From Podarcis erhardii (taxonomy: Eukaryota), in NCBI GenBank assembly GCA_964252035.1, contig OZ176207.1: DNA of 64,000 bases; one strand, written 5' to 3'. Numbering within the stretch: position 1 is the stretch's first letter; every line of letters begins with the position of its first letter. Shown piece after piece: positions 21,121 to 46,973 of the stretch. A program made the translations under genes and the position numbers. The notes under the pieces are model-generated. The model was not told where the DNA came from. It saw only the letters and a program-made list of their open reading frames with translations, and ran no database searches.

Positions 21121-23550
21121 CTGCTCACCAACCTCCTCTTTGGCATTGGTATCCCCACAGTTGCCATCCACAAGAACCACCTGAGAGCTATCATTGCATA
21201 GCAAGTTTTCTGCCACCTGGATATGGGGTTTCGGGAAAGAGATCTGCTCTTTCCTCATCTCTGACGATAGGCAGAGTTGGTAGGGATAAGGTAACGTTCC
21301 TTCTTCATAGTTTGGTGGAAATATGACCTGCGCCTTAGAAAAAGCATTAGGTTCAAAGCATTGGAATAATTTGGGATTTCCTGATTGTCGAAGTTTCATG
21401 ACAATGACCAGTATCACCGTCAGGAGGAATAAAAATGAGATCAATGCCAAAGCCAGCACCAAGTAAAACTGGAGGTCAGAATGATGCTCTGTGTCACTGG
21501 ATTGCCTAGTCATTTCTGGAAGTGCCTCTTGGAAGTTCTCGGCAATCACAAGGTTGAGGACCACAGTAGCTGAGAGAGGAGGCTTCCCATTGTCCTTCAC
21601 CAAGATGACCAGCTTCTGTTTCACAGCATCTTTCTCCAGAAGGGCTCGTGACGTCCTGATCTCTCCCGTGTGGGTCCCAATGGTGAAGAGGGCTGGCTCT
21701 GTGGCCTGCAGCACTTGGTAGGAGAGCCAGGCATTGTGCCCAGAGTCCGCGTCCACAGCCACCACTTTGGTCACTAAGTAGCCTGGCTCTGCCGAGTGAG
21801 GAACCATCTCAAACAAGGCAGAGCCCTCAACACCCGGGACAGGATACAGAACGCGAGGGCTGTTATCGTTCTGATCCAAAATGTACACCCACATGGTGGC
21901 ATTGTTGCTGAGAGAGGGAGAACCGCCATCTTGGGCCTTCACTTGGATCTGAAACTCCCTGAATTGCTCATAGTCAAAGGAGCGCTGTGCATAGATAGTT
22001 CCCGTCTCAGAGTTGATGGAGACGTAAGAGGAGAGAGGCAGCTCCTCCATGTTGCTGTTGAGGATGGAGTAAGTGATACGTGAGTTGCGGTCCAGATCTG
22101 GGTCCGAGGCTTTGATGGAGAAAATGGAGGCACCTGAGGGATTGTTTTCTGGCACAAAGACACTGTAGGTTGATTTTTCAAAGGCAGGGGGGTTGTCATT
22201 GATATCTGAAATCTGCATGGAGATGGTTTTGTTGGAGGAGAGAGGGGGGCTACCTTTGTCGGTGGCTGTGATTGTGATGTTGTATCCTGAGGCTTTTTCT
22301 CTGTCCAAAGGACTGTCTGTAAGGATTTTGTAGTAGTTCTTAGATACAGACTCTATTTTAAATGGTACGTTACCTTGTAGATGGCATGTAATTTTTCCAT
22401 TTTCACCAGAATCTTTATCCTTTACGTTGATGAGAGCTATTACTGTTCCAGAAACAGAGTCTTCAGGAATTGGACTAGATAAGGAGGCCAGAATGATCTC
22501 TGGGGCATTGTCATTCTCATCTATAATCTTTATATCAACATTACAGTGAGCCACTAATCCGCCTCCATCTCTTGCTTCAACTGCCATAGTGTACTTCTCT
22601 GTTTCCTCAAAGTCTAGAGCTTCCTTAATTGTAATTGTTCCACTTTGTGGATCTAGTTCAAATATTTGGTGGGCTGTCTCTGGGATGTTATTAAAAATAT
22701 AACTAATATGTGCATTTAGACCTTCATCCCTATCAGAGGCTTTTACTTGGAGTATTGGGGACCCCACAGGAGAATTTTCCCTCAGGCTAACTGTATAAAC
22801 TTTTTGAGTGAAGACTGGTGGGTTGTCATTGGCATCTGTGACATTAATCCATATCTGGGCAGTCCCAGTTTTTCTGGGTTCACCCCCATCCAAGGCCGTA
22901 AGGATCAACTGAAGCGAGTGCTCACTTTCCCGATCCAAAGATTTTTGCAACACCAATTCTGCATATTTATGGCCATCTTCTCTCTGTAGTATGTCTAGAA
23001 TGAAATAGTGATTTGGACTTAGCTGGTAATTCTGGAGAGAATTAATACCAATATCAGGATCTTCAGCTTTCCCAAGGAGAAATCTGGCACCTGGTAATGT
23101 GGATTCAATTATTTGAAGCCCAATATTGCCATTTATGAATTGTGGGGCATTATCATTAATGTCCTGAATTGCTACACTTACATGGAAAACATTCAATGGC
23201 TTTTCCACCACAGCTTCAAAATCAATAATGCAGTGTGTGCTCTCTCTACACATTCCCTCACGATCTATCCTCTCATTCACATACAGGTTTCCATTTTCAG
23301 CATTGATAGTGAAATATGGCTTTTTACCTTCAGAAATGATATGCAGCTTTCTGCTCTTCAGTTCTCTGGCATTCAGTCCTAGATCCTTGGCAAGATTTCC
23401 CACCAAAGACCCCTTTGCCATCTCCTCAGGGATGGAATAGTGAACCTCTTCCAAAACTGCTCCACAAAACAAAGATGAAAATATCAGAAGTGTTATATAC
23501 CTCCCTGGTGTTTGAAAGCTCTCTCCATGAAGGATTCCTCTCATCTTCAT
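21121..23550 (-). CDS. PCDHGB: Protocadherin gamma variable exon V4 (gammaB-like, B2 group)
   Basis: ORF 21076..23574 opens at a GTG; the first ATG is at 23550 (MKMRGILH). Six cadherin repeats, TM and EGTLPYPY. Phase-0 donor CAG|GTAAGC at 21121/21120. Confidence 0.95.
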
Positions 23551-23793
23551 TTTCCTCTTCTCTTTGATGAGCACAGGATTTCAGATTTCCACCAAGACAG
23601 GAGATTTTCCCCAGTAAAAAAAAGAACTGGATCTTTTGGCTTAATTTGTATATGCTGCAGTGTTTTCTTTTTTCTTTCTCAGCTGAAACGTTTTTTCCAG
23701 CGTCTGCTGGTATTCCCGATGTGCAGTTTGGGACAAAGAGATCTCTCTGCAGAAAGCATCAGTGGAACTTCAGCTGCTCTTGGATTGCCGCCT

Positions 23794-23816
23794 TGTCCAA
23801 CAGTGACACTGTGAGT
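23794..23816 (-). promoter_or_regulatory. CSE of the V4 promoter, variant core CACT
   Basis: Minus strand ACTCACAGTGTCACTGTTGGACA, about 245 bp upstream of the ATG. Confidence 0.8.
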
Positions 23817-24260
23817 CTGAAGCAGAGAACTGCAATCTTTTCCCAGTGATTTTTCTTCCCTAATTCATGACATGGCATGGTGGTATTTATATTTAATGAC
23901 TCAAACTATATTCTGATACAGGATATGTGAACCCTCTTCTGTTATAAAGCAGAAATATTTGTGTTTTGTTTGTGTTATCTTTTCACTAGTATTACAGGTA
24001 AAAAAAAATAAACTTCAAAGGAGTATTTGCAGTAAAGAACAAGCAATAAAAACATAGTATAGATTCACTTCCTCCATTTAAAGCACTTACAATTTTTACA
24101 AAGAATATCAATCTGTAAACCTCTCTAAGAGAAAAATTGAATTTCTCTAGTGGATTTCTCTATGAAGTGTTACGGTGTATAAAGAAAAAGACGATGGGAG
24201 AATTGAGGAAATTATTTTATTCAAGGTTTTAAAAACCTCCAAGGAAGGAGAGAGAGAATG

Positions 24261-24370
24261 ATGGAATCTTAGAGTTGGAAGGGACCCCAGGGGTCATCTA
24301 GTCCAACCCCCGGCAACGCAGGAATCTCAGTTAAAGCATCCATGGCAGATGGCCATCCAACCTCTGTTTA
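24261..24370 (-). mobile_element. CR1-like 3' fragment
   Basis: gaatcttagagttggaagggacccc...ggtcatctagtccaaccc...gatggccatccaacctctgttta, typical of amniote CR1 3' ends in reverse orientation. Confidence 0.6.
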
Positions 24371-25662: not shown

Positions 25663-25720
25663 TTCAATATTGATCCAATACTTGGACATTGTTGGGTCCA
25701 AGTATTGGATCAATATTGAA
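25663..25720. repeat. Perfect 25-bp inverted repeat with an 8-nt spacer
   Basis: TTCAATATTGATCCAATACTTGGAC attgttgg GTCCAAGTATTGGATCAATATTGAA. Confidence 0.95.
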
Positions 25721-26722
25721 ACTGGTCTTTTCTCTTCAGTACCCTCCCCCCCAGCTCCACTGAGTGCAAATGAGGACCTTTAGGTATCATCAGCTCTGAG
25801 CCAGTAAGTGCTACAGTCAATGAGATCATCCGTACAGACGAATAATTGCCATCACCAGATTCTCCCAAATTAGTAAGAATACCATGGAGGTTGGTTTGGA
25901 TAACTCTCCTTTCAGGACTTGGGCTGCTCACTATAGGATCCTTATGTTTTCTAACCTACTTAGCACTTGCCAATTGTGGCACATTTAAAAAGAATGGCTG
26001 GGGTCCAAATACAGCCAGTCTTTAATTATTGACTGCCTAGCAGATGAGAAAGCTCCTGTCATTCATCCTCTCATTCAGCCAATTTAGCAACAAGAACAAA
26101 ATACTACCATTCAGCCCCAATTGGGAACTGATAGATCCTGCCTTGTTTGAAGCTAGAAGGAGAAGGCCAGATACTGCCATGCCAAACAGAGGCATAGAGA
26201 ATGGTACCATCATGCCCACGCCAACTGTCCACAGAGGCAGCGTTGAGAACATGCTGCACAATTTACACCTCCAAAAGATTAAAATAAAAGCGTCTTCTGT
26301 GGAGTTCAAAGATACACATAAAAAGGTTGCATCCACATTACACATGACCTCCTACATTAAAACAATGGGTTAAGCATTGCATCCAGTGCTCAATTAAATA
26401 GCAACAATTTGATCAGTGAAATCCAATCTGCACTGTTAAATGAAACAGGGAAACTCTAGATGCGAACCATGATGTCAAAGTACTTTGTACAATGTTCTTC
26501 AACATGAACCACAAGTAGCCTATTCAGACTTTTGTAAGGACTCTAGTATATCTGAAATTAACATCATTTTAGACCTAGTGAAGCCATATCATATTATTTT
26601 AAATCCAGGTAGCTACAATGCACTACTGGTGAAAAATGATACATTGTACTCCAATAATTCAATGTTGTAGTTGACCATTCTTGATTCAAAAGGAAAGAAA
26701 GAAGGGGGCTATGATTATAAAG

Positions 26723-30406: not shown

Positions 30407-30678
30407 CTGGCTGGTTCTCTCAAAAACAGGCTGCTTCCTTTTCTCAGTTTCCTATGCTCAAGCTCTCACAGTGATGAAGGAAACAACACGAGGTATCACT
30501 GAGGAAGAATAAACTGCCCTTGTTCTCATATGTGTGCAAAGCAAAAGAGATTTTTCCTTCTCTGCAAGAGTTCCCTGTCTCTGTGCTCTTCAGTTGGCCT
30601 GATCTGAATAGCAGGGATGGGAGTTACTGCAGTCTAGGAAGCATCAATGGATCTCTATCCTCTCTCTGGCTCTCATAC

Positions 30679-30701
30679 TGGCCAACACTGACACTTAGAG
30701 G
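30679..30701 (-). promoter_or_regulatory. CSE of the V5 promoter, variant core CAGT
   Basis: Minus strand CCTCTAAGTGTCAGTGTTGGCCA, about 273 bp upstream of the ATG. Confidence 0.75.
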
Positions 30702-31037
30702 ACCACTCAAGGAACTGCAAGGAAAACCATGTTGTTCAATGTACAGTACCTTCCCTTTAGCAAATTTCAAGTTATTTGCTTTCAGTTTGTACACATTAAA
30801 GCAACAGCTCCTCTGATTGCTGCGCATAACAGCTCACAAGACTCAAAACCCAGTCTGGAGATATACAGCCTATTGAAAACATGTTTTGCCTTGATGTCTA
30901 TCCCACTGAAATTGAACCCCATTGAATGGACCCAAGGGATCTCCAGCAGAGCATTGCCTCACTTTAACATGCTTATAGTCCTTTGTCAGTCTATCATACA
31001 ACATCAGGGCACACAATTCCTTTCATTAAAATGTAGC

Positions 31038-31235
31038 AACATAAGAAGAGCCTTGCTGGATCAGACCTAAGGCCTTTCTTATTAAGCAGCTTGTCTCCCA
31101 CTGTGGCATCTGGAGGCATCCTGCTTCTAGTACCTGACGGGATATAGTCAGCACGACTTGCGACCACCATGAAGTTGTCTATAAGGCATCCAAGTTAGTG
31201 GCCATCACAGCTTTTTGTGGGAGCAATTCCCATAA
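31038..31235 (-). mobile_element. CR1-like 3' fragment
   Basis: aacataagaagagccttgctggatcagacc...; a homologous copy lies at about 42712-42950. Confidence 0.55.
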
Positions 31236-32498
31236 GTTATTTATTTATTAAAATGTGTAAAGTATGTGTGATTGTTCTGTATAAATAAAAATAATGTCTG
31301 GATACAAGTTTCAATAGTTTTATATTATACACTCTAAGAAAACATACCGATTTATAAAGTTTCTAACAGTGTGTGTGCGTCTGTATTATCTTGAACCTTA
31401 TTGCACAAATTAAGTATGAAAATGGTCTATTTTTCCACAACGTTATCAGTCTCCCCACTCTGACTCTTACCATATTCATTAGTTTAACGATAGATAAAAT
31501 ATCCCATACCCTAATAATCCACTCCTGTAAAGCTGGTGTTCTTAACCACACACTCCACTCAACTTATACCAAATAGTTGTTCTTGCTATAGTTAATAAGT
31601 CTTGGACTAATACTCTGCTAGTATTAAACCCTTAATACAACTGAATAAAACAATCAGAATAACCATTGATAAAATGTGTCCTGTTATTATTTCAAATTCC
31701 CTTATTATATCCACTCGGAACCTTTCATTTCAGGACATGCCCCACAAAAATGTTGCATCCTAGCATTGGTTGCCTTGCACCTCCCACTTAAATTACTTGC
31801 TGTCCTGTAGATGTGGTTGAAATGTGGCACTGGAAGGACCATATCGCTTCTCCCTTGTCTTTGATCTAAACTAAATATTGTTAAGCGTTGCATTTTTTCC
31901 GAATAAAGAAGTTGTTCCACCCACTTGACCATCTTAGTTGCACTTTTCTGAGCATTCTGCATTTCATACAAGTTCTTTCTACATGAATCTTCCAGAGAAG
32001 TTCAAAACACTCCAAAAGATCTACTATGAACAAATAGGAAGCATTCATGTTTTATACATTTTTCAGTTAACTCGAATCACAACAGGATGAATAAACTATG
32101 TGAGTGAACGAAGTAAAAATCCACATATTTAACCTCTAGGAGGAACTAAAAAATAACTACTGTATATAATGATAGTGATATTTTAATAATCTACAGGAAA
32201 AAAATTACTAGAAAGTAGAAGAGGATATAAATTCCATAATTCATGAAGACTCACCTGAACGCCATTTTCAGACTCAACATTGAATTTGCCTCTGTCATTG
32301 CAATTTGAAGACTACTTGTAAAAAAAGTTTTCTACAGTCTGAACAGCTGGTTCCAGTAATATAATTTGATTTTTTTTTTTTTTTTAGTTCTCTCATAAAT
32401 CAGGCAGTTAAGAGGAAGACAACTAAAAATACTAGTTTTGCTCATACAAGGAGCAAGGTCGTGGTGCCAGCACCTCAGTTTCTGAAAGCAAAGCTTAC

Positions 32499-34928
32499 CT
32501 GCTCACCAACTTCCTCTTTGGCATTGGTATCCCCACCGTTGCCATCCACAAGAACCACCTGAGAGCTATCATTGCATAGCAAGTTTTCTGCCACCTGGAT
32601 ATGGGGTTTCGGGAAAGAGATCTGCTCTTTCCTCATCTCTGACGATAGGCAGAGTTGGTAGGAATAAGGTAAAGTTCCTTCTTCATAGTTTGGTGGAAAT
32701 ATGACCTGCGCCTTAGAAAAAGCATTAGGTTCGAAGCACTGGAATAATTTGGGATTTCCTGATTGTCGAAGTTTCATGACAATGACCAGTATCACCGTCA
32801 GGAGGAACAAAAATGAGATCAATGCCAAAGCCAGCACCAAGTAAAACTGGAGGTCAGAATGATGCTCTGTGTCACTGGATTGCCTAGTCATTTCTGGAAG
32901 TGCCTCTTGGAAGTTCTCAGCAACCACGAGGTTGAGGACCACAGTAGTAGAGAGAGGAGCCTTCCCATTGTCCTTCACCAAGATGACCAGCTTCTGTTTC
33001 ACAGCATCTTTCTCCAGAAGGGCTCGTGACGTCCTGATCTCTCCCGTATGGGTCCCAATAGTGAAAAGGGCCGGCTCTGTGGCCTGCAGCACTTGGTAGG
33101 AGAGCCAGGCATTGTGCCCAGAGTCTGCGTCCACAGCCACCACTTTGGTCACTAGGTAGCCTGGCTCTGCTGAGTGAGGAACCATCTCAAACAAGGCAGA
33201 GCCCTCAGCGCCCGGGAGAGGATACAGAACGCGGGGGCTGTTATCATTCTGATCCAAAATGTACACCCACACGGTGGCGTTGTTGCTGAGAGAGGGAGAG
33301 CCGCCATCTTGGGCCTTCACTTGGATCTGAAACTCCCTGAATTGCTCATAGTCAAAGGAGCGCTGTGCATAGATAGTTCCTGTCTCAGAGTTGATGGAGA
33401 CGTAAGAGGAGAGAGGCAGCTCCTCCATGTTGCTGTTGAGGATGGAGTAAGTGATACGTGAGTTGCGGTCCAGATCTGGGTCTGAGGCTTTGATGGAGAA
33501 AATGGAGGCACCTGAGGGATTGTTTTCAGGCACAAAGACGCTGTAGGTTGATTTTTCAAAGGCAGGGGAGTTGTCATTGATGTCTGAAATCTGCAGGGAG
33601 ATGGTTTTATTGGAGGAGAGAGGGGGGCTACCTTTGTCGGTGGCCGTGATTGTGATGTTGTATCCTGAGGCTTTTTCTCTGTCCAATGGACTGTCTGTGT
33701 GGATTTTGTAGTTGTTCTTAGATATTGATGATATTTTAAATGGTACATTACTTAGTAGATGGCATGTAATTTTTCCATTTTCTCCAGAATCCCTATCCTT
33801 TACATTGATGAGAGCAATTATTGTTCCAGAAACAGAGTCTTCTGATACTGGGGTGGATAAGGAGGCCACGATGATCTCTGGAGCATTGTCATTCTCATCT
33901 AGAATCTTTATATCAACATTACAGTGAGCCACTAATCCACCTCCATCTCTTGCTTCAACTGCCACTGTGTACTTTTCTGTTTCCTCAAAGTCAAGAGCTT
34001 TCTTAATTGTAATGGTTCCACTTTGTGGATCTAGTCTAAATTTCTCATAGACTTTTTCTGGGCCTTTACTGAATGTGTAACTGATCTGACTATTTGAACC
34101 TTCATCCCTATCAGAGGCTTTTACCTGGAGTATGAAGGACCCCACAGGGGAATTTTCCCTCAGGCTAACTGTATAAACCTCTTGAGTGAAGACTGGTGGG
34201 TTATCATTGGCATCTGTGACGTTAATCCATATCTGGGCAGTCCCAGTTTTTCTGGGTTCACCCCCATCCAAGGCCGTAAGGATCAACTGAAAGGAGTGTT
34301 CGCTTTCCCGATCCAAAGGTTTCTGCAGCACCAATTCTGCAGATTTATGGCCATCCAGATTATGCTTAATTTCTAATATAAAGAACTGATTTAGGCTTAA
34401 CTGATAATTCTGGAGAGAATTAATCCCAATATCAGGATCTTCAGCTTTCCCAAGGAGAAATCTGGCACCTGGCAATGTGGATTCAATTATTTCAAGTCTA
34501 ATATTGGCTTCTAAGAATTGTGGCGCATTATCATTAATGTCTTGGATTGCTAGACTAACATGGAAAACATTCAATGGATTTTCAACCACAGCTTCAAAAT
34601 CAATAATGCAGTGTTTGCTCTCTCTACACATTCCCTCACGATCTATCCTCTCATTCACATACAAGTTTCCATTTTCAGCATTGATAGTGAAATATGGCTT
34701 TTTACCTTCAGAAAGGATATGCAGGTTTCTGTTCTTCAGGTCTCTGGCATTGAGTCCTAGATCCTTGGCAAGATTTCCCACCAAAGACCCCTTTGCCATC
34801 TCCTCAGGGATGGAATAGTGAACCTCTTCCAAAACTGCTCCACAGAACAAAGATGAAAATATCAGAAGTGTTATATACCTCCCTGATGTTTGAAAGCTCT
34901 TTCCTTGAAGGATTCCTCTCATATTCAT
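32499..34928 (-). CDS. PCDHGB: Protocadherin gamma variable exon V6 (gammaB-like, B2 group)
   Basis: ORF 32475..34952; first ATG at 34928 (MNMRGILQ). Phase-0 donor CAG|GTAAGC at 32499/32498. Confidence 0.95.
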
Positions 34929-35169
34929 TTTCCTCTTCTCTTTGATGAGCACAGGATTTCAGATTTCCACCAAGACAGGAGATTTCCCCCCAGTAAAAAA
35001 AAGAACTGGATCCTTTGGCTTAATTTGTATATGCTGCAGTGTTTTCTTTTTTCCAGCTGAAACGTTTTTCCCCCAGCGTCTGCTGGTATTCCCGATGTGC
35101 AGTTTGGGACAAAGAGATCTCTCTGCAGAAAGCATCAGTGAAACTTCAGCTGCCCTTGGATTGCCGCCT

Positions 35170-35192
35170 TGTCCAACAGTGACACTGTGAGT
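35170..35192 (-). promoter_or_regulatory. CSE of the V6 promoter, variant core CACT
   Basis: Minus strand ACTCACAGTGTCACTGTTGGACA, identical to V4 and V8. Confidence 0.8.
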
Positions 35193-36573
35193 CTGAAACC
35201 GAGAACTGCAATCTTTTCCCAGTGATTTTTCTTCCCTAATTCATGACATGACATAGTAGTATTTTTAAGTATTGACTCAGACCATATTCTCATACAGGTT
35301 TTCTGAATATGCCTGTTAGAAAGTATTATCTGTTCACCATTGCAATGGTTTAAAAGAAATCAGCTTCAAATAAATATTTACAGCAAAGAAAAAGCGGTAA
35401 TGAATTTATAGCACTATTTCCACCCCCTAATCTTAATCCAAGCAAAGTAATGTATTTATACATTGCTTCTTTAGAAAACTAAATCAGAATAGCAGACTGC
35501 AGTATGAGAATGAATTTTTTTTATATAATAAAAGATTTTAAACAAATTTTAAAAATATTGTATTAGGTATTTACAGGCATCTTAGACTGTGTGTGGAAAG
35601 CCTAAGGCCGTGTCTGAAAATTGTGTTTATCTTTACATAATTTCACTGAAAATAGTGCCACATCTCAAGTCCTATTTTGTCACCTTATGTCCACACGATT
35701 TCTGGTCTGTTTGTGTAGCTTTCTCCTTCAACAGTTGTACTGTGTCAGTATTTACATTTGCCATTTTCCCCACCTGCCCATTTGTTCAGTTACGATAGAC
35801 ACTTTGCTGATTTCATTTACTTTGTGGTGTGTGCTTTTGACCTTACACAACACCCCAGCTACTTCACAATATCACAGATATGGGTCATCCCCTCTACATA
35901 TGCAAGCAATATGGAGACCCCTATTTTGCCGGTGGGGGGTGGGGGTGGGACAGGACAACCAGAAAGCTACTAGAACTCTCTACAGTCCTTTCAGTATTTT
36001 AGGAAGTTACATGTGGTCTCCAGCTGTCAATGCAACTTCATTTTAATCAAGGAACAAAACTGCATACATAAGCCCTGGGTGTTTTATGTTGGACCTCAAA
36101 AGTTCTGAGCCTTCCCCTTCATTTTTAAACTTCTTTTTCTTTGTTTACATGGTAGCTGAGCACACTGCAATTGTCAGTCATGATCCTGTGCCCTAATTCC
36201 TTACAGCAGCTAGCAACAACCCTGGCAAGAACATTCCTCCATCATCACATCTACTGGCCATGAGCCCAGCAGGGATGTGGTTCATTGCAGGCTTACGTAA
36301 CTCAAGAACCTGCTAAGATATCCCACAATGCTATGATCAGAAATACAGTTATCCATCTATTCATGCATTCATGTCATGTAAGCAACATAGCTAACATGTT
36401 AGTAGAGCAGTTCAAGAATTCAACATGCTTCATGTATATTGAGCTGGTCTCATGTAAAAAACAAAACTGTGAACCAGGAATTCCATGGTATGAATTTTGC
36501 CTCTGACAGGAACTCTCTTATATAAGAATTATAAGATAATGTGTCAAATCCAGACTTCATCATACTTAGAGTA

Positions 36574-36931
36574 AGGTAAAGGTAAATGGACCCCTAACCA
36601 TTAGGTCCAGTCGTGGCCGACTCCTGGGTTGCGGCGCTCATCTCGCTTTATTGGCCAAGGGAGCCGGCATACAGCTTCTGGGTCATGTGGCCAGCATGAC
36701 TAAGCTGCTTCTGGTGAGCCAGAGCAGTGCACGGAAACGCCGTTTACCTTCCTGCCGGAGCGCTATCTATTTATCTACTTGCACTTTGACGTTCTTTCAA
36801 ACTGCTAGGTGGGCAAGAGCTGGGACTGAGCAACGGGAGCTCACCCCGTCGCAGGGATTCGAACCGACGACCTTCTGATTGGCAAGCCCTAGGCTCTGTG
36901 GTTTAACTCACAGCGCCACCCGCATCCCGCT
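36574..36931 (-). mobile_element. Sauria SINE, full length, reverse orientation
   Basis: aggtaaaggtaaa tail at the left and cagcgccacccgcatccc head at the right. 14-bp TSD TCATACTTAGAGTA at 36560-36573 and 36932-36945; empty paralogous site at 48602-48615. Confidence 0.93.
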
Positions 36932-38590
36932 TCATACTTAGAGTAGCCTGACTTAAATAAAATTGACTTAAATTAGTCTTGCTTGACTAACTTGGTCCAA
37001 GGATAACTAATTCTGAATCTGACCCATTATATGCAATGCCCTTTGAAACATATAAATATAATACACACTGTAAGTATCATTATTATTGTCTAAATCATGA
37101 GGCAGAAATACATGACGCAGGCAGTGCAATCTGGCAGGTACTCTAGAAGGCCAGGCAGTCAGTCAGTCAGTCAGTCAATCAGTCTTGACTTGACTTTTTT
37201 TACATCACTCATGCAGAAACACACATGCCTTTATTGAACCCCACCTTACAGAAAACAAAACACGACTGATTTATGTTTTCCCACCCAAAAATTCCAGTAT
37301 GCAGAGATATGGTGAATGGACTTGACCATGGACCACCATCTCATTTATTTACAAGTCTGATCTGATTTCTACCAAGTTGAGGGCCTTCCTTGCTAGTCAC
37401 ATTTAATTGGTGACCCCACTCTGGACCTAAGATTGGGATCAGTACTGAAACTGGTATTTGCTCTTCACTCAATTTTGTGTAGAGGAGGACATTTAAACAC
37501 CAGGAGCTGGTAAATCTTAGGTATGAGGTAATTAGTTCTCCTTTCCAGATGCACCCAAGGTAGTAAGGACCTATGAGGCTAAGCATCCTTTTATGCCATG
37601 TTGCGCCCACTTTAGGTTCCTTAGGTTTCTAATCTACATAGAACATGTGCATTGTGGACTATTTAAATGGAATACTGGTATCTGTATGTAGCTAGGCTTT
37701 AAATCTCCACACTCTGAATTTTAATACTGAATTCCAGTATTAAAATTAGAAAAATGTGTGGACTAAACTAATGTAGATGTCATTAGTTTGATAAGGCAAT
37801 TCAATCTGATGTTTCTTGAACTTTCCTCTTCACTAAGTGAAACAGGGAATCTCTAGATCTGAACTATGTATAAATACTTTATACAGTGATGTTTAATGTG
37901 AATTGTAGGCAGAAATTCATTGTATAATTTGTAAGTGAAATTATATAAACAGCATAATTCACACTCATAACCTAGATTCATACAATCTACTGAAGTTCAT
38001 GGTAGCTGCAGTTCATTAAACTGAAAACTCATACAGTATAAATGAACAAATTTATAATTAATTTGATTTTATGGAGAAGAAAGTAAAGCATAATTTACAG
38101 ACACCTCTCAAAACTATGTCTTTAAAATCTATTGCTTAAAAAAATTGCTAGTAATACTAATAACAGTGATAGTATTTTCTGCTATATAGCAAGGTGCCCT
38201 CCTTTGATTCTACAGCCAAAATTGCTGCACAATAGCCCCTGCAAAGCCAAGTAACGTGAAAAACAAAGTTCTTTTCCTCACTTTATTTAATTTAATGAAA
38301 GTAGTTGAAGGTCAACTCCTCAAAATACTAGTTGTTCAAATGACAACAAGATAAGTTCTACCAGATGGTTTCAAGGGTATGGCTCAAAGCTGCAATGTGT
38401 AGCTTCCCCATGGAGCGAAAAGGATGCATCCTGATTCATGAAAGCCAAATGATGTAAGAGCCAAACTATTCATTTATATGATGAAAAACAAAAAGGCAGT
38501 CACATTAGCTGGATAAAAAGCACTGTGACAATGTCACTGATGGCAAAAAATGATGGATAATGGCATTTAATTTCAGAAAACAAACCTTAC

Positions 38591-41011
38591 CTGTTCTCCA
38601 TTATCTACTGCAGAATCAAAATTGTTTCCTACATTGCCTGTAAAAGGCACAGCAGGTTTCTCACCGCTAAGAACATTGTCTGCCATCTGAACACTGGGTG
38701 TCAGGAAGGCAAACTCATTCTTCCTGGTCTCAGAAGACAGACACAGCTGGTAGGAATAGGGCAAAGTCCCATCTTCAAAGTTGGGTGGGAAGATGGCACC
38801 ATTCTTGGAATGGGGAACAGGACCAAAGCACTGTAGGAACCTGGGATGCCCTGATTGACGGAGCTTCACTGTAACGGCCAGAATCACAGTCAAGAGGAAC
38901 AAGAAGGAGATCACAGCTAAGGCCAGCACCAAGTAGAACTGCAGGTCAGACTGATACTCTGAGTTGCTGGGTTGGCTCTTCATTTCTGGAAGGGCCTCCT
39001 GAAAGTTCTCAGCAAACACCAGGTTCAGAGTCATGGTGGCCGAGAGAGACGGCTGCCCGTTATCCTTCACCATAATGACCAGTCTCTGTTTCACAGCGTC
39101 TCTCTCCACAAAGGCCCTGGCTGTCCTGATCTCTCCAGTATGAGAACCAACCGTGAAGAGTGCCGGCTCAGTGGCCTGAGTGAGGTGGTAGGAGAGCCAG
39201 GCGTTGTGTCCAGAATCTGCATCCACGGCCACCACCTTGGTGACAAGGTAATCTGCCTCGGCCGAACGAGGCACCATCTCAAACAAGGCTGAGCCCTTGG
39301 CTTCTTGTGAGGGGGACAGGATACGAGGGCTGTTATCATTCCTGTCAAGAACAAACACCCTGACGCTCACATTGCTGCTGAGAGGGGGAGAACCCCCATC
39401 TTGGGCCTTCACTTGCAGCTGGAACTCTCTGAATTGTTCATAGTCAAAGGATCTCTGGGCATAAATGGTGCCGGTCTCTGAATTAATGGAGATATAGGAG
39501 GAGATGGGAAGCTCCTCGATGTTGCTGTTGAGGATGGAGTATGTGATCCGTGAGTTCTGATCCATATCGGGATCAGAGGCTTTGATGGTGAGAATGGAGG
39601 CACCTGAAGGATTGTTTTCTGGCACATAGATGTTGTAGGTTGATCTCTGAAATGTAGGGGCATTATCATTGATGTCTGAGATCTGTAGAGAGATTGTATT
39701 GTGTGTGGAAAGAGGTGGATTTCCTCTGTCAGTGGCTGTGATTGTAATATTATAAGCAGGAGCTATTTCTCTGTCCAAAGGACTGTCGGTCTGGAGTTTG
39801 AAGTAATTGTTAGATGAGGGAAGAACTTTGAAGGGTAAATCATCGTTTAAGTAGCAAGTAACCTTTCCATTATCTCCACTATCTCTATCATTCACATTGA
39901 TCAGTGCAATGATTGTTCCTGGCAGAGAATCTTCAGGAACAGGACTGAACATGGAGGCTAATGTCACATCCGGGGCATTATCATTCTCATCACGAACCCG
40001 TATCTCAATATTAGAATGTGTCACCAATCCACCTCCATCTTTTGCAGCAACTGTCATAGTATATTCATCATCGTCCTCAAAATCCAGTTGCTCCAGAAGA
40101 GTGATTCTACCACTGATGGGATCCAGCCTGAATTTCTGTTCAGCAGTGGCCGGTATGTTGCTAAAATGATACCTGATTTGGGCATTTGTACCTTCATCCT
40201 CATCAGAGGCTGCAACCTGGAGCACAAGTGACCCAACAGGAACATTTTCAGATAAGCTGAGCTTGTATACCTCTTGAGTGAAAACAGGTGGGTTGTCATT
40301 GGCATCTGTGACATTAATCTGTATCTGTGCTGTCCCAGTCTTCCTAGGCTCACCCCCATCCATAGCTGTAAGAACCAAGTGAAGGGTCTGTTCACGTTCT
40401 CGATCAAGAGGGTTCTGTAGCACCAGTTCTGCATATTTATTTCCATCTTTCCTTTCTCTAACTTCCAAAGAGAAATACTGATTGGAGCTCAGCTGGTAAT
40501 CCTGGAGAGAGTTCATCCCAATGTCAGGATCTTCCGCTTTCCCAAGGAGAAAGCGGGCCCCAGGCAAGGTTTGTTCTCCTGTCTCCAAGTTGATGTTGCC
40601 ATTGAGGAATTGGGGTGCATTATCATTAACATCCTGGATTTCCACTAGTACATGAAAAATATTCAAAGGGTTTTCTACTACAACTTCAAAATTAACAAAG
40701 CAATTTGGATTTCTGCCACATATCCCCTCCCTATCAATCCTGTCATTTACATAGAGGTTTCCATTCTCTGCATTGATACTGAAATGCTGCATTTTAGCCA
40801 CAGACACAGTGTGCAGATTGCGATGTTTTAGCTCTTTGGTGCTCAGTCCCAGGTCCTTGGCGAGGTTCCCCACAATGGAACCCTTTGCCATCTCCTCAGG
40901 GGTTGAATAATGAATCTGCTCTGATGCAGCCCAACAGGTAAAAGACAATAGAGAGAGAAGCAGTACTTGCCTTGTGAGTGCCCTGCCATTCCCTGGGTGC
41001 CTTCTCTCCAT
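38591..41011 (-). CDS. PCDHGB: Protocadherin gamma variable exon V7 (gammaB-like, B1 group, apparently chimeric)
   Basis: 812-aa ORF 38573..41011 (MERRHPG...AVDNGEQ). Phase-0 donor CAG|GTAAGG at 38591/38590. Confidence 0.95.
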
Positions 41012-41279
41012 CTGGCTGGTTCTCTCAAAAACAGGCTGCTTCCTTTTCTCAGTTTCCTATGCTTAAGCTCTCACAATGAAGAAGGAAACATGAGGTATCA
41101 CTGAGGAAGAATAAACTGCCTTATTCTTATATTTGTGCAAAGCAAAAGAGATTTTTCCTTCTCTGCAAGAGTTCCCTGTCACTGTACTCTTCAGTTGATC
41201 TGATCTGAACAACAGTGATGGGAGTTACTGCAGTCTAGGAAGCATCACTGGATCTCTATCCTCTCTCTGGCTCTCATAC

Positions 41280-41302
41280 TGGCCAACACTGACACTTAGA
41301 GG
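41280..41302 (-). promoter_or_regulatory. CSE of the V7 promoter, variant core CAGT
   Basis: Minus strand CCTCTAAGTGTCAGTGTTGGCCA, identical to V5. Confidence 0.75.
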
Positions 41303-42072
41303 ACCACTCAAGGAACTGCATTTTGTTCTATGAAAATAGAAGTGAATAAAAGCAGATATTTCTCCAGCACATACTGATACCTTCCTTTCTGCTCACTTAG
41401 TGGAGCATTTGAGAAAGCTTTTCCTTGGTGTTCTTTCTTAGTGTACAGCTACCCTCATTTATGTTCGTGGCTTTTCAGTACTGTGATAATTGGGGTCGTA
41501 TCTAATACTGCAATTACATGAAGGTTATGCACATCTTCATTTTTTATTGGAAATATGGAAACATTATTATTAATATATAAAAATCCAGTTACAGAGTAAA
41601 ACTTTATCTTAAAATTAATGTTTTACGATAATAATTATGCTATAGTAGCACAGGAGCTGTACGTCTACTGTATTTTTGTTGTTGTTGCTTAAATAGAATA
41701 TAAACACCCTCTTGAAATTATTCTCTTTTTTTATCTCTCCTAAGTTGTTGGATGCCTGTTCATCAACATTTATAGAACACAGCACAAGTTCTTCTCAGGG
41801 TTGGGTAGGAATTCCAAGAGTAACTTACTATTCCAAGAGTTCTCTCTCTGTCTGTTGAGGGTAAGATAAGATGCAACACATGTAGCTTCTGTCTAGACAG
41901 CACTAGGTGATAAAAGTGTGTTCGCTGGTATTGGTTCTACATCAGACTCTGCCCCCTGCCTCCTACCTGCTGGTGCCACACAAATGTCCTTGCTTAGCAG
42001 TTGCTCCCCTGTGATCAAAGCAGGAACCCAGCACAAGTGCAGGACCAATGGCTGTAGTTGCTCTACCAGCAG

Positions 42073-42250
42073 TAAAAAAGGGTAAAGGACCCCTGGATAG
42101 TTATGTTCAGTCAAAGGTGACTATGGGGTGGCAGCGCTCATCTCTCTTTCAGGCCGAGGGAGTCGGCATTGGTCCACAGACAGCTTTCCAGGTCATGTGG
42201 CCAGCATAACTAAACAGCTTTTGGCACAACAGAACACCTTGACGGAAGCT
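42073..42250 (-). mobile_element. Sauria SINE 3' fragment
   Basis: ggtaaaggacccctgga...gcgctcatctc...ggtcatgtggccagcat; it interrupts sequence that is contiguous in the paralogous spacer near 17900. Confidence 0.7.
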
Positions 42251-42711
42251 AGGCATGATCCAACAGGATAAAATGTTTGTTGGCACTTTACACATGATTT
42301 CATATTATGATAATAGCATCATGAAGTTTGGGAACTGAGAACAGTGGAGAGACAAGAGGTGTTAGAAGAAATAAATAGTGTCTAATTGAAAGAGTATATG
42401 ATAGAGGTTTTATTAGAAAATAAGTAATTTACTTTCAGTTTGTATGCATTAAAGGGAATAGCTCCTCTTAATGCTCCATATAACAGCCTACAGGACCATA
42501 AACCCAATCTGGAGATGTGTATGCTATTCAAATATTTTTGCCTGCCATATATCCCCTTGAAACTGGACCCCCACTGAACAGAATTTACATTTCCAAGTGA
42601 TCACAACCAGAGTGCTGCCTAATTTTCAACATGCTTCTAGTTTTTCATCTGCTAGTCTATCACACAGAAACATTGCACACAATTCTATTTCATAAAAACA
42701 CAAAAGCATAA

Positions 42712-42950
42712 AAGCATAAGAAGAGCCCTGCTGGATCAGGCCAGAGCTCTATTGAGTCCAGCATCCTTTCTCCCACTGTGGCCAGGCCAACCAGATGCCC
42801 CTCAAAAGCTCTGCCCTTGGTCCACAGTCAGAGGTGTCTGGTACTAGACATAATATAGCCAACATGACAATGAATTTTTTTCTAATACCCCTTTAAAATC
42901 ACCCAAGTAGGTGACCATCATTTCTTCTTGTGGTAGTGATTTCCATTGTT
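42712..42950 (-). mobile_element. CR1-like 3' fragment
   Basis: agcataagaagagccctgctggatcaggcc...gagtccagcatcctttctcccactgtggcc. Confidence 0.55.
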
Positions 42951-43523
42951 TGTTTGTTTGTTTAAATAAGTAAATTATTTAGAAATGGGTTATATAAAAA
43001 GAAAATGGTTGGGTATACAATTACCATTAAATTTCTATTATGAACTCAAATAAAGCATATAGCCTTCATAAAGATCCGAATAAAGTATGTGGGTCTGCGT
43101 TATCTTGAACTTCATTGCACCAATAAAATATGAAAATAAACACAGAAAGTTATCAGACTGCTTCCCCTCTCTGACTCTTACTGTATTAATTAGTTGAACC
43201 ATTGATAAAATATTCCATGCTGTAGTAATCCATTCCCCTAAAGCTGGTGTTCTTAGCCCCTGCCCTCAGTTATAACAAATAGTTGCTCTGGCCACAGACA
43301 GTTACTGTTGGAGTAATTATCTGTCTTCTGTTGTACTAAATCCTTAAAGTAACTAGAGAAATCAATGAGAGGATCCATTGGCAAAGTGCATCCTGTCATT
43401 ATTTCATTTTCTCTTATTATATCCACCCACAAATTCTTAATTTAGGGACATGCCTCCCAAATCTGTTGCATCCTAGCATTGGTTGAATTGTACTTCCAAC
43501 GTAATTATTTGCTGTACTATAAA

Positions 43524-43628
43524 TTTGACCAAACTGTGGGAGGCAGTGGAAGACTGGAGTGCCTGGCGTGCTCTGGTCCATGGGGTCATGACGAGTCGGG
43601 CACGACTAAACAACTAAACAACAACAAC
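43524..43628 (+). mobile_element. Bov-B 3' terminal fragment
   Basis: tttgaccaaactgtgggaggcagtggaagactggagtgcctggcgtgctctggtccatggggtc...cgactaaacaactaaacaacaac matches the 3' end of the 12.1-kb Bov-B copy. Confidence 0.85.
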
Positions 43629-43769
43629 TAAAATGTGACGAAGCCACAGTAGTGTCATGTACCATCAAAAAATAAACGTATACAAGTGTTTCTTAAGATT
43701 CACACTAATTGTTTGCTGCCATATCCATTTTCACTGATCTGATGTCCCAGACTTCTCTGGCAATTACTT

Positions 43770-44060
43770 TGTTGCATTTAGTTGTCAACAAGGAATTCGA
43801 TAGTTTAACAATGCATTGTATGAAGAAGGTCTTCCTTAAATCTGTTCTGAATCTCCCAATGTTCAGCTTCACCCAATGGCCACAGGCTCCAGTAATATGG
43901 GGGAGGGGAATCTCTCTATTCATTTTCTCTACCTCGTTCATAATTCTATACAGCTGTTTCACTTCCCTTCTTGCATTTTATCTAAACTAAATATCCCTAC
44001 AGAAGTTGTTGTACCCATTGATCATTTGGGATGCCTTTTTCTGTGCTTGCTGTATTTCAC
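43770..44060 (-). mobile_element. Degraded CR1 ORF2 C-terminal fragment
   Basis: The minus-strand peptide GHWVKLNIGRFRTDLRKTFFIQCIVKL resembles the CR1 RT C-terminus. A related remnant lies at about 31800-31960. Confidence 0.6.
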
Positions 44061-44543
44061 ACAACTTCGTTTTATGAATCCTCCAGAGAAGCCACACACA
44101 GCCCAAAATAATACTACAAATAAATAGGAAGCATTCACGTTTTATGCATTCTTCAGTTAAGCTGATCATAACAGGGCAAATAAACTGTGCTTTGTGTGAG
44201 TGAAAAAGTACAAATCCTTATATTTAATTGATGAGGGATGTATAAATAAATATATATTTATGGTGACATGCTAATAACCCACAGGAAGATTGAACACTCA
44301 AGCTCTATGCATGCTTACATTTCTTTTAATTCCTGAGATGAAGACTCACTCTGCCATTATTGCATGCCTCAGAATTTATGCTTCGTCTAGCATTTCTATG
44401 TGTAGGGAAAGTTCTTCACAATCAGAACAACTGCTGTTAACACTGTAATTTTATTTTCCTGACCCCTTTATATAGTAAAATGAAATAAAAATATTAGTTT
44501 TATTCTTATAAGGAGCAATGCTGTTTCTGAAAGCAAAGCTTAC

Positions 44544-46973
44544 CTGCTCACCAACCTCCTCTTTGGCATTGGTATCCCCACAGTTGCCATCCACAAGAAC
44601 CACCTGAGAGCTATCATTGCATAGCAAGTTTTCTGCCACCTGGATATGGGGTTTCGGGAAAGAGATCTGCTCTTTCCTCATCTCTGACGATAGACAGAGT
44701 TGGTAGGAATAAGGTAAAGTTCCTTCTTCATAGTTTGGTGGAAATATGACCTGCGCCTTAGAAAAAGCATTAGGTTCAAAGCATTGGAATAATTTGGGAT
44801 TTCCTGATTGTCGAAGTTTCATGACAATGACCAGTATCACCGTCAGGAGGAATAAAAATGAGATCAATGCCAAAGCCAGCACCAAGTAAAATTGGAGGTC
44901 AGAATGATGCTCTGTGTCACTGGATTGCCTAGTCATTTCTGGAAGTGCCTCTTGGAAGGTCTCAGCAACCACGAGGTTGAGGACCACAGTAGCTGAGAGA
45001 GGAGGCTTCCCATTGTCCTTCACCAAGATGACCAGCTTCTGTTTCACAGCATCTTTCTCCAGAAGGGCTCGTGACGTCCTGATCTCTCCTGTGTGGGTAC
45101 CAATGGTGAAGAGGGTCGGCTCCGTGGCCTGCAGTACTTGGTAGGAGAGCCAGGCATTGTGCCCAGAGTCTGCGTCCACAGCCACCACTTTGGTCACTAG
45201 GTAGCCTGGCTCTGCCAAGTGAGGAACCATCTCAAACAAGGCAGAGCCCTCAACACCTGGGACAGGATAGAGAACGCGGGGGCTGTTATCATTCTGATCC
45301 AAAATGTACACCCACACGGTGGCATTGTTGCTGAGAGAGGGAGAGCCGCCATCTTGGGCCTTCACTTGGATCTGAAACTCCCTGAATTGCTCATAGTCAA
45401 AGGAGCGCTGTGCATAGATAGTTCCTGTCTCAGAGTTGATGGAGACGTAAGAGGAGAGAGGCAGATCCTCCATGTTGCTGTTGAGGATGGAGTAAGTGAT
45501 ACGTGAGTTGCGGTCCAGATCTGGGTCCGAGGCTTTGAGGGCAAAAATGGAGGCACCTGAGGGATTGTTTTCAGGAACAAAGACACTGTAGGTTGATTTT
45601 TCAAAGGCAGGGGGGTTGTCATTGATGTCTGAAATCTGCAGGGAAATGGTTTTGTTGGAGGAGAGAGGGGGGCTACCTTTGTCGGTGGCCGTGATTGTGA
45701 TGTTGTATTCTGAGGCTTTTTCTCTGTCCAATGGACTGTGTGTGAGGATTTTATAGTAGTTCTTTGAAGTTGACACTATTTGAAATGGTACATTACCTTG
45801 TAGATGGCATGTAATTTTTCCATTTTCTCCAGAATCTTTATCCTTTACGTTGATGAGAGCAATTAGTGTTCCAGAAGCAGAGTCTTCAGGAACTGGACTA
45901 GATAAGGAGGCCAGAATGATCTCTGGGGCATTGTCATTCTCATCTATAATCTTTATATCAACATTACAGTGAGCCACTAATCCACCTCCATCTCTTGCTT
46001 CAACGGTCATAGTGTACTTCTCTGTTTCCTCAAAGTCAAGAGCTTCCTTAATTGTAATTGTTCCACTTTGTGGATCTAGTCTAAATTTCTCATAGACTTT
46101 TTCTGGGACTTTACTGAATGTGTAACTGATCTGACTATTTGAACCTTCATCCCTATCAGAGGCTTTTACTTGGAGTATGGAGGACCCCAGAGGGGAATTT
46201 TCCCTCAGGCTAACTGTATAAACCTCTTGAGTGAAGACTGGTGGGTTATCATTGGCATCTGTGATGTTAATCCATATCTGGGCAGTACCAGTTTTTCTGG
46301 GTTCACCCCCATCCAGGGCCGTAAGGATCAACTGAAGCGAGTGCTCACTTTCCCGATCCAAAGGTTTCTGCAGCACCAATTCTGCAGATTTATGGCCATC
46401 CAGACTATGCTTAATTTCTAATATAAAGAACTGATTTAGGCTTAACTGATAATTCTGGAGAGAATTAATCCCAATATCGGGATCTTCAGCTTTCCCAATA
46501 TGAAATCTGGCACCCGGCAATGTGGATTCAATTATATCTAGTCTAATACTGGATTCTAGGAATTGTGGGGCATTATCATTAATGTCTTGAATTGCTACAC
46601 TTACATGGAAAACATTCAATGGCTTTTCAACCATCGCTTCAAAATCAATAATGCAGTGTGTGCTCTCTCTACACATCCCCTCACGATCTATCCTCTCATT
46701 CACATACAGGTTTCCATTTTCAGCATTGATAGTGAAATATGGCTTTTTACCTTCAGAAATGATATGCAGGTTTCTGCTCTTCAGTTCTCTGGCATTTAGT
46801 CCCAGATCCTTGGCAAGATTTCCCACCAAAGACCCCTTTGCCATCTCCTCAGGGATGGAATAGTTAACCTCTTCCAAAACTGCTCCACAGAACAAAGATG
46901 AAAATATCAGAAGTGTTATATGCCTTCCTGGTGTTTGAAAGCTCTTTCCATGGAGGATTCCTCTCACCTTCAT
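44544..46973 (-). CDS. PCDHGB: Protocadherin gamma variable exon V8 (gammaB-like, B2 group)
   Basis: ORF 44451..46997; first ATG at 46973 (MKVRGILH). Phase-0 donor CAG|GTAAGC at 44544/44543. Confidence 0.95.

What the first reader, a model, noticed from the sequence alone, without database searches (positions are those of the whole stretch)
21121..46973. Sister gammaB exons diverged in matched interface pairs: V4 in EC2+EC3, V6 in EC1+EC4
Seen in the translations, with V1 as a rough outgroup: V8 mostly keeps the shared states. V4 differs in EC2 (INGNIGLQ; [15 protein letters not shown]; QKS) and early EC3 ([21 protein letters not shown] versus [21 protein letters not shown]), but agrees with V8 in EC1 and EC4. 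V6 agrees with V8 in EC2 and early EC3, but differs in EC1 (RDLKN, HILS, ESK, ENP, SLA; two of these states are shared with V1) and in EC4 (IVASLST, SED, DRD, LLSN, KNNYKIH). Established: EC1 contacts EC4 and EC2 contacts EC3 in the trans-dimer. Inference: two independent routes to new self-recognition specificity, each changing both partners of one interface half. The V4 EC2 patch (PNxYF...REDG) resembles V11 and may be imported. Caveat: the B1 group does not show this pairing.
Basis: partly seen in the sequence, partly recalled or inferred. Interest (0 to 1): 0.7.

Follow-up and report, generated by a model that had tools for sequence, protein, structure and literature searches.

The report
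Gene-conversion mosaics in lizard protocadherin exons

Summary
The window holds 11 tandem clustered-protocadherin (gammaB-like) variable exons of a lacertid lizard, all on the minus strand.

**Observation: confirmed.** Unique residues over EC1-EC4 are:
- V4: 1, 12, 13, 2
- V6: 6, 1, 3, 8

**Interpretation: only partly holds.**
- Synonymous sites follow the same pattern, and dN/dS is 0.2-0.35 in every domain.
- V4's differences lie in three dense patches (EC2a, EC2b, EC3c). The V4 positional orthologues of Podarcis lilfordi, P. raffonei and Lacerta agilis carry the same patches, so they are old isoform-specific cassettes, not recent V4 change.
- The V6 orthologues of all three species carry a different late EC1-EC3. 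The window's V6 matches V8 there at 64 of 79 informative sites, and the cassettes differ by 1/90 and 1/81 nt. This is a recent V8-like conversion.
- Most of V6's "unique" EC1 and EC4 states are ancestral V6 states left on either side of that tract.
- Cassettes recombine freely across lacertids; P. raffonei's V1 took the V4-type EC3 cassette alone.
- At the three variable gammaB contact pairs named in the literature, only one partner varies.

The patches do sit on known interface loops. This is a new instance of a known process, of moderate interest. The scan had not reported it on other DNA.

The parts
21121..23550 (-). V4 variable exon (ATG at 23550, splice donor CAG|GTAAGC after 21121): signal peptide, EC1-EC6, transmembrane segment and short cytoplasmic part.
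   Evidence: ORF. Pfam finds Cadherin_2, five Cadherin domains and Cadherin_C_2. The best solved relatives are mouse gammaB4, gammaB2 and gammaB7. Donor shown.
23110..23139 (-). V4 cassette EC2a ([10 protein letters not shown]). Its Q aligns to gammaB7 residue 111.
   Evidence: Dense V4-unique changes. Kept as FIKGNIGLQI in the V4 orthologues Pl4, Pr4 and La4. Mapping.
22939..23028 (-). V4 cassette EC2b (beta4, the beta4-beta5 loop and beta5 of EC2; [19 protein letters not shown]...QKS).
   Evidence: 24-25 of 90 nt differ from V6 and V8, but only 3-8 of 90 from the V4 orthologues and 4-6 of 90 from the V6 orthologues of other species. Closest in the window is V5, at 73/90 identical.
22657..22719 (-). 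[quoted passage not shown] Aligns to gammaB7 243-261, which includes residue 253.
   Evidence: 24-25 of 81 nt differ from V6 and V8, against 1, 1 and 2 from the V4 orthologues of P. lilfordi, P. raffonei and L. agilis. No donor in the window: every other exon is 56-65% identical.
32499..34928 (-). V6 variable exon (ATG at 34928, donor after 32499).
   Evidence: Its positional orthologues are P0057 (P. lilfordi), P0202 (P. raffonei) and P0201 (L. agilis), judged by synteny.
33939..34679 (-). V8-like conversion region inside V6 (late EC1 to the end of EC3). It is patchy, with at least two cores: EC2b at 34317-34406 and EC3c at 34035-34097.
   Evidence: At sites where the three V6 orthologues agree and differ from V8, V6 matches V8 at 64 of 79 inside the region and 7 of 23 outside (Fisher p = 1e-5). 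V6 and V8 differ by 1/90 nt in EC2b and 1/81 in EC3c. The cassette tree groups V6 with V8 at 100/99.
33687..33884 (-). V6 EC4a and EC4b ([20 protein letters not shown]; [14 protein letters not shown]): retained V6-type EC4. The N in KNNYK aligns to gammaB7 residue 369.
   Evidence: In EC4, V6 groups with the L. agilis V6 orthologue at 99/96, while V8 groups with the Podarcis V6 orthologues. Shared states are listed. A unitig from run X1 covers 33663-33948 with 3 differences.
34527..34826 (-). V6 EC1. Of its six 'unique' states, four (D, N, L in HILS, N in ENP) are shared with V6 orthologues.
   Evidence: Alignment. Unitigs from runs X1 and X2 cover 34495-34645 and 34467-34645 with 0 differences.
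44544..46973 (-). V8 variable exon, the likely donor of V6's EC2b (46362-46451) and EC3c (46080-46142) cassettes.
   Evidence: The whole V8 unit (41012-49961) is homologous to the V6 unit (30407-38572), intergenic DNA included.
1..2083 (-).
   Evidence: It resembles V4, V6 and V8 only from about codon 37 onward. Its P. raffonei orthologue carries the V4-type EC3c cassette.

Best explanation
V4, V6 and V8 are members of one subgroup (with V1) of gammaB-like clustered-protocadherin variable exons in a lacertid lizard. Their pattern of differences is a mosaic made by gene conversion between paralogues, not by substitutions on the V4 and V6 lineages.

**Shown**
1. The subgroup is homogenised from late EC4 to the splice donor (1-5% nt) and largely in EC1.
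2. Strong differences survive only as short, dense cassettes.
3. V4's EC2a, EC2b and EC3c cassettes are old and are kept in its positional orthologues in two other Podarcis species and in Lacerta.
4. The ancestral V6, as seen in three species, had its own late EC1-EC3. In the window's lineage this was overwritten by V8-like sequence in at least two tracts that include both EC2b and EC3c.
5. V6 kept V6-type states on both sides of the tract. That is why it looks 'diverged in EC1 and EC4'.

**Inferred**
- The cassettes persist because they lie on loops of the trans-dimer interface that set homophilic specificity, so selection resists their loss.
- Because EC2 and EC3 are adjacent, one central conversion event moves both partners of the EC2:EC3 half together and leaves the matched EC1/EC4 pair on the flanks. 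The 'matched pairs' may therefore be largely a matter of geometry.
For: - **Synonymous sites and dN/dS.** dS rises together with dN and omega is flat at 0.2-0.35. The synonymous-only contrast has p = 0.006.
- **Clustering.** V4's differences sit in three patches of 27-40% nt divergence, flanked by about 5%.
- **Ancestral-looking states.** 28 of 54 V4 patch states match more distant paralogues, against 7 of 29 for V8's singletons.
- **Flanks.** The V6 and V8 units are homologous throughout. V4 shares only the exon and about 400 bp of promoter with them.
- **Synteny.** The order V7-V6-V5-V4 is the same in P. lilfordi, P. raffonei and L. agilis.
- **V4 orthologues.** They keep the cassettes: EC3c differs by 1, 1 and 2 nt.
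- **V6 orthologues.** They share a different late EC1-EC3. V6 matches V8 at 64 of 79 informative sites in the centre and 7 of 23 outside.
- **Segment trees.** Cassettes: V6+V8 at 100/99, with the V6 orthologues in a separate clade at 93/98. EC4: V6 with L. agilis V6 at 99/96. EC5-6: concerted.
- **A second, independent transfer.** P. raffonei's V1 orthologue took the V4-type EC3c, 3/81 nt from V4.
- **Other subgroups are mosaics too**.
Against: - The positional orthologue of V8 could not be fetched. V8 as the donor is therefore inferred from its being the only exon in the window with those cassettes, plus one V8-like protein from another lacertid (P0206).
- Public reads were available only as unitigs of 330 nt or less. 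They confirm each V6 segment but not the long-range linkage.
- A neutral mosaic alone does not explain why V6 and V8 have no synonymous difference in the two cassettes when about 4.4 are expected from the surrounding sequence (p = 0.012).
- It also does not explain why V6 was never fully converted in any lineage.
Confidence: 0.78

Rival explanations
1. Selection-filtered cassette exchange. Conversion supplies the variation, but only mosaics that keep contacting elements matched survive: EC2b with EC3c, and EC1 with EC4. Each surviving mosaic still binds itself and differs from its donor. Conversion would then be a way of making new isoforms, not only of erasing them.
For: - The cassettes map to interface loops (PMC5001838, PMC5106212).
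- V6 took both EC2b and EC3c from V8, while 3 of the 4 informative sites between them stayed V6-type.
- The cassettes are more alike than their surroundings: 0 synonymous differences against 4.4 expected, p = 0.012.
- V6 was converted in EC1b-EC3 in this lineage and in EC4 in P. raffonei and P. lilfordi, but never over its whole length.
Against: - Cassette combinations are promiscuous. The V4-type EC3c occurs with V4-type, V1-type and V8-like EC2b, and P. raffonei's V1 took EC3c alone.
- At the gammaB pairs 86:369, 111:294 and 125:253 only one partner varies.
- Patchy mismatch repair within one long heteroduplex would give the same two-core picture.
- The argument rests on very few events.
Confidence: 0.2
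2. After a recent duplication from a V8-like ancestor, V4 gained new point substitutions in EC2 and EC3, and V6 gained them in EC1 and EC4. These would be two independent adaptive routes to new self-recognition.
For: - The domain-level contrast is highly non-random (p = 6e-6).
- V4's N:S ratio is higher in EC2+3 than elsewhere (34:31 against 6:19, p = 0.019).
- A few V6 states have no counterpart in any sequence seen: K in ESK, L in SLA, V in IIVAS, L in HLLS and H in KIHT.
Against: - The synonymous pattern is the same, and omega is below 0.4 everywhere.
- V4's states are present in its orthologues in three species.
- Most V6 states are shared with V6 orthologues.
- V4 is not a recent sister of V8: its flanks are not homologous to theirs.
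- There are no paired changes at the named contact pairs.
Confidence: 0.04
3. Assembly artefact. V6 is a chimera produced by mis-assembly or polishing across the repeated V6 and V8 units.
For: The V6 and V8 units are long repeats 89-94% identical. The cassettes are almost identical between the two exons.
Against: - V6 and V8 differ by 5-9% immediately beside the cassettes, which is unlike a collapsed repeat.
- Unitigs from two studies carry the V6-specific EC1b-EC2a stretch with 0 differences, and the V6-type EC4a stretch.
- No joints or indels were seen.
Confidence: 0.03

Closest known systems
Regional gene conversion in clustered protocadherin arrays (Noonan et al. 2004 Genome Res, as cited in PMC2764143 and PMC4978886; fugu, PMC1852091)
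   Same: - Tandem variable exons of one subgroup are homogenised in EC5-EC6, the transmembrane segment and the cytoplasmic part.
- Diversity survives in the N-terminal ectodomains.
- dS is the diagnostic measure.
   Different: - Here conversion also reaches EC1, EC4 and the EC2/EC3 specificity region itself (V8 into V6; V4-type EC3c into P. raffonei V1).
- Xenopus EC2/EC3 were described as apparently not subject to conversion (PMC4978886).
- Anole gamma-b exons were described as showing little conversion (PMC2764143).
Matched EC1:EC4 and EC2:EC3 trans-dimer logic of clustered protocadherins (Rubinstein 2015, as described in 10.1101/493106; Goodman 2016, PMC5106212; Nicoludis 2016, PMC5001838; Goodman 2022, PMC8901172)
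   Same: - The domain architecture is the same.
- The closest solved structures are mouse gammaB4, gammaB2 and gammaB7.
- E41 and a basic residue at position 340 are conserved.
- Variable residues fall at gammaB7 positions 111, 253 and 369.
- V6 and V8 are 90.9% identical over EC1-4, close to mouse beta6/beta8 (92%), which do not cross-bind.
   Different: - Nothing was tested for binding here.
- The partner positions 86, 294 and 125 are invariant among V4, V6 and V8.
- Position 338 is N, not K.
Laboratory domain-swap chimeras of closely related isoforms (alpha7/alpha8, beta6/beta8, gammaA8/gammaA9; described in 10.1101/493106)
   Same: The window's V6 is in effect a natural chimera: EC2/EC3 cassettes of one isoform in the EC1/EC4 frame of another.
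   Different: It arose by natural conversion, is patchy rather than bounded by domains, and its binding specificity is unknown.

Membership tests
Clustered protocadherin gamma (gammaB-like) variable exon | One large exon encoding a signal peptide, six EC repeats, a transmembrane segment and a short cytoplasmic stretch. | tested here: met
   ORFs of 812-851 aa. Pfam finds Cadherin_2, five Cadherin domains and Cadherin_C_2.
Clustered protocadherin gamma (gammaB-like) variable exon | A tandem array in one orientation, each exon ending at a splice donor that joins shared gamma constant exons. | tested here: met
   Eleven exons lie on the minus strand. The donor CAG|GTAAGC is identical in V4, V6 and V8. 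Orthologue models P0204-P0206 and P0061 continue after ...GEQ into one shared constant tail. The constant exons lie outside the window.
Clustered protocadherin gamma (gammaB-like) variable exon | The gammaB-specific EC1:EC4 salt bridge: E41 with K338/R340 in gammaB7 (PMC5106212). | tested here: inconclusive
   E41 is conserved in V1, V4, V6 and V8, and position 340 is K, but 338 is N. The closest solved chains are gammaB4, gammaB2 and gammaB7.
Interlocus (paralogue) gene conversion mosaic | Different segments of one exon give conflicting, well-supported trees. | tested here: met
   in the cassettes V6 groups with V8 at 100/99; in EC4 V6 groups with L. agilis V6 at 99/96; EC5-6 is concerted.
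Interlocus (paralogue) gene conversion mosaic | Synonymous divergence changes in step with non-synonymous divergence along the exon. | tested here: met
Interlocus (paralogue) gene conversion mosaic | A segment resembles a paralogue of the same genome more than it resembles the positional orthologues, while the flanks remain orthologous. | tested here: met
Compensatory co-evolution of contacting interface residues | Both residues of a contacting pair differ between the isoforms. | tested here: not met
   gammaB7 pairs 86:369, 111:294 and 125:253: only one side varies. Pair 41:338/340: neither side varies. Only pairs named in the text of PMC5106212 could be tested.
Compensatory co-evolution of contacting interface residues | Lineage-specific excess of non-synonymous change (dN/dS above 1) in the paired domains. 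| tested here: not met
   Omega is 0.12-0.37 in all EC domains. V6's N:S ratio in hot against cold domains gives p = 0.43.
Compensatory co-evolution of contacting interface residues | The changed residues lie in the trans interface. | tested here: inconclusive
   The mapping to gammaB7 is by sequence alignment only. No dimer model or full interface list was available.

The most novel reading that the evidence does not exclude
In lacertid lizards, short-tract gene conversion shuffles a small set of old interface-loop cassettes among gammaB-like exons: the EC2 beta4-beta5 region, the EC3 Phe-X10-Phe loop and the start of EC4. Conversion would then create new homophilic specificities by recombination as well as erasing them. 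Selection would keep each exon from being fully overwritten and would favour joint transfer of contacting cassettes.
Probability: 0.25. Interest if true: 0.6.

Novelty: new member of a known kind. Interest (0 to 1): 0.35.

Why it matters
Clustered protocadherins give neurons their self/non-self barcodes. How new isoform specificities arise, and how they survive constant homogenisation, is still argued.

- **A worked example with positional orthologues in four lacertids.** It shows which parts of closely related exons are overwritten and which are kept.
- **The specificity region can be transferred.** The EC2/EC3 region can itself move between paralogues.
- **A caution on method.** A trio comparison with a paralogue as outgroup can turn conversion into apparent 'paired divergence'.
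- **Ready-made test material.** It supplies natural chimeras for binding assays: the window's V6, and P. raffonei's V1.

Tried and rejected
- **Donor for V4's EC3c within the window.** None found. Every other exon is 56-65% identical there. For EC2b the closest is V5, at 73/90.
- **Full gammaB interface residue list.** The supplements of PMC5106212 hold only statistics and species lists. Only the residue pairs named in the text could be tested.
- **Fetching the Zootoca protein P0052 and the V8-like protein P0206.** Neither is on record, so V8's positional orthologue was not obtained.
- **Podarcis muralis Ensembl-type models P0039, P0048 and P0042.** These join parts of different variable exons, so I did not use them as evidence of linkage.
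- **Public reads.** Only short unitigs were available. They are good for showing that segments exist, not for linkage.
- **V8 as a recombinant child of V4 and V6.** Considered and rejected, because the V6 orthologues of three species show that V6 is the exon that changed.
- **Human sequence.** No human contig was met or used.


Full report
**What is in the window.** Ten complete ORFs of 812-851 aa and one ORF cut by the window start all lie on the minus strand. V4 has the clustered-protocadherin architecture: Cadherin_2, five Cadherin domains and Cadherin_C_2. Its closest solved relatives are mouse gammaB4, gammaB2 and gammaB7. The exons fall into sequence groups:
- V1, V4, V6 and V8 form one subgroup.
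- V2, V5, V7 and V9 form a second.
- V3 and V10 form a third.
- V11 stands alone.

V4, V6 and V8 end at identical donors, CAG|GTAAGC, at 21121, 32499 and 44544. Homologues and syntenic loci place the window in a lacertid lizard. It is 93-96% identical to Podarcis lilfordi and P. raffonei and about 90-92% identical to Lacerta agilis in aligned blocks, and identical to none of them.

All quoted strings are present. Residues that are singletons within the trio number 1, 12, 13, 2 for V4 over EC1-EC4, 6, 1, 3, 8 for V6 and 2, 4, 2, 4 for V8. The V4 against V6 contrast gives p = 6e-6. Three qualifications apply:
- 'Agreement' is loose. V6 and V8 still differ at 8 residues in EC2 and 7 in EC3 (site-pattern counts).
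- V8 has changes of its own in EC2.
- V4's differences are not spread out. 54 of its 98 unique nucleotide changes fall within 61 codons, in three patches: EC2a, EC2b and EC3c.

**Synonymous sites tell the same story.** Per-domain dS rises with dN. For V4 against V6 or V8, dS is 0.37-0.41 in EC2 and 0.24-0.30 in EC3, against 0.17 and 0.08 for V6 against V8. Omega stays at 0.12-0.37 everywhere. Counting synonymous singletons only, V4 has 31 in EC2+3 against 10 in EC1+4, and V6 has 8 against 13 (p = 0.006). The patches reach 27-40% nucleotide divergence and are flanked by about 5%. These segments therefore have a different history. They are not hotspots of amino-acid change.

**V4 is not a recent sister of V8.** The V6 and V8 units are homologous across their whole intergenic DNA. 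V4 shares only the exon and about 400 bp of promoter with them, and V1 shares only coding sequence from about codon 37. Within V4's patches, 28 of 54 V4 states are the ones favoured among more distant paralogues, against 7 of 29 for V8's singletons. Polarising with V1 therefore misleads.

**Positional orthologues decide the matter.** Loci from P. lilfordi (L001), L. agilis (L002) and P. raffonei (L003, L004) keep the order V7-V6-V5-V4.

*V4.* The V4 orthologues of all three species carry V4's cassettes. EC3c differs by 1, 1 and 2 nucleotides, and EC2b by 3, 8 and 5. These are old, isoform-specific sequences.

*V6, centre.* The V6 orthologues of all three species share a quite different late EC1-EC3. 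At sites where they agree and differ from V8, the window's V6 matches V8 at 64 of 79 sites between aa columns 95 and 341, and at 7 of 23 outside (p = 1e-5). V6 and V8 differ by 1/90 nt in EC2b and 1/81 in EC3c.

*Segment trees*:
- On the cassettes, V6 groups with V8 (100/99), apart from its own orthologues (93/98).
- On EC4, V6 groups with the L. agilis V6 orthologue (99/96), while V8 groups with the Podarcis V6 orthologues.

*V6, flanks.* Four of V6's six 'unique' EC1 states and most of its EC4 states recur in V6 orthologues.

The window's V6 is thus an ancestral V6 whose centre was overwritten by V8-like sequence after the split from the other Podarcis species. Its EC1 and EC4 'divergence' is what remained on the two flanks.

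**The cassettes move independently.**
- P. raffonei's V1 orthologue carries the V4-type EC3c, 3/81 nt from V4, in an otherwise V1-type exon with a V1-type EC2b.
- Across lacertid proteins, the V4-type EC3c occurs with V4-type, V1-type and V8-like EC2b. The 6-type EC3c occurs with V4-like and V8-like EC2b.
- The other subgroups are mosaics as well. V7 is V5-like in EC1 and V2/V9-like in EC4. V3 and V10 are 1.6-3.6% apart in EC4-EC6 but 21-28% apart in EC1-EC3.

**Relation to the interface.** I mapped positions by alignment to gammaB7.
- EC2a contains residue 111.
- EC3c is the Phe-X10-Phe loop with residue 253.
- V6's K-to-N change lies in the EC1 beta6-beta7 loop.
- V6's Y-to-N change is residue 369.

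These are elements the structural papers name as contacts or specificity sites (PMC5001838, PMC5106212), so the differences are plausibly functional. At the named pairs, however, only one side varies among V4, V6 and V8:

| gammaB7 pair | What varies |
|---|---|
| 86:369 | 369 only |
| 111:294 | 111 only |
| 125:253 | 253 only |
| 41:338/340 | neither |

V6 and V8 are 90.9% identical over EC1-4. That is close to mouse beta6/beta8, which do not cross-bind (PMC8901172), so V6 and V8 may well be distinct isoforms. Nothing here tests that.

**What remains open.**
- V6 and V8 have no synonymous difference in the two cassettes where about 4.4 are expected (p = 0.012).
- Three of the four informative sites between the cassettes stayed V6-type.
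- V6 was converted in different parts in different lineages, but never as a whole.

These points fit selection that favours joint transfer of contacting cassettes and resists full homogenisation. They also fit patchy repair of a single heteroduplex, and the events are few.

**Checks on the assembly.** Public runs gave only short unitigs. They carry V6-specific EC1b-EC2a with no differences in two studies, and V6-type EC4a, with no joints or indels. They cannot prove linkage. No human contig was met.

**Verdict.** It is not supported in its evolutionary claim. This is a new, well-resolved instance of the known gene-conversion mosaicism of protocadherin clusters. The less usual feature is that the EC2/EC3 specificity cassettes themselves are exchanged.

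Noticed in passing
window 38573-41011 (V7), compared with V5, V2 and V9: V7 is itself a mosaic. It differs from V5 by 12/300 nt in EC1 but 61/315 in EC4, and from V2 and V9 by 20 and 29/315 in EC4.
   Followed up: partly
window 13625-16087 (V3) and 55572-58025 (V10): V3 and V10 are 21-28% apart in EC1-EC3 but only 1.6-3.6% apart in EC4-EC6, and 18% apart again in the transmembrane and cytoplasmic part (52/282). A homogenised block is thus bounded on both sides.
   Followed up: no
window 30407-38572 and 41012-49961: The V6 unit and the V8 unit are homologous along their whole length, intergenic DNA included, at about 70-94% identity depending on the block. This indicates tandem duplication of a pair made of one exon of the V2/V5/V7/V9 group and one of the V1/V4/V6/V8 group. 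V4's flanks are not alignable with them beyond about 400 bp of promoter.
   Followed up: partly
L004:9587-12208 (P. raffonei V1 orthologue): A tract of roughly 240 nt in EC3 carries V4-type sequence, the Phe-X10-Phe loop included, in an otherwise V1-type exon. The window's V1 and P. lilfordi's V1 (P0097) lack it.
   Followed up: partly
L001 and L003, V6 orthologues, EC4: In P. raffonei and P. lilfordi the V6 orthologue has a V8-type EC4 (2/123 and 2/90 nt from the window's V8 for P. raffonei). L. agilis and the window keep the other EC4 type. A different part of V6 was therefore converted in each lineage.
   Followed up: partly
proteins P0039, P0048, P0042 (Podarcis muralis models): These database gene models join pieces of different variable exons: two EC1 starts, or a switch into V3-type sequence part-way through. 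They are annotation chimeras and unsafe for linkage arguments.
   Followed up: no
window 34476-34587 and 33972-34027: Run X5 (organism C) has no unitig at 96% likeness or better in these two V6 bins, while X1, X2 and X6 do. V6 may differ there between closely related taxa.
   Followed up: no
window 1974-2083: V1's signal-peptide region and promoter show no nucleotide similarity to those of V4, V6 and V8. Similarity starts about 109 nt after the ATG, which looks like a conversion boundary near the start of EC1.
   Followed up: no
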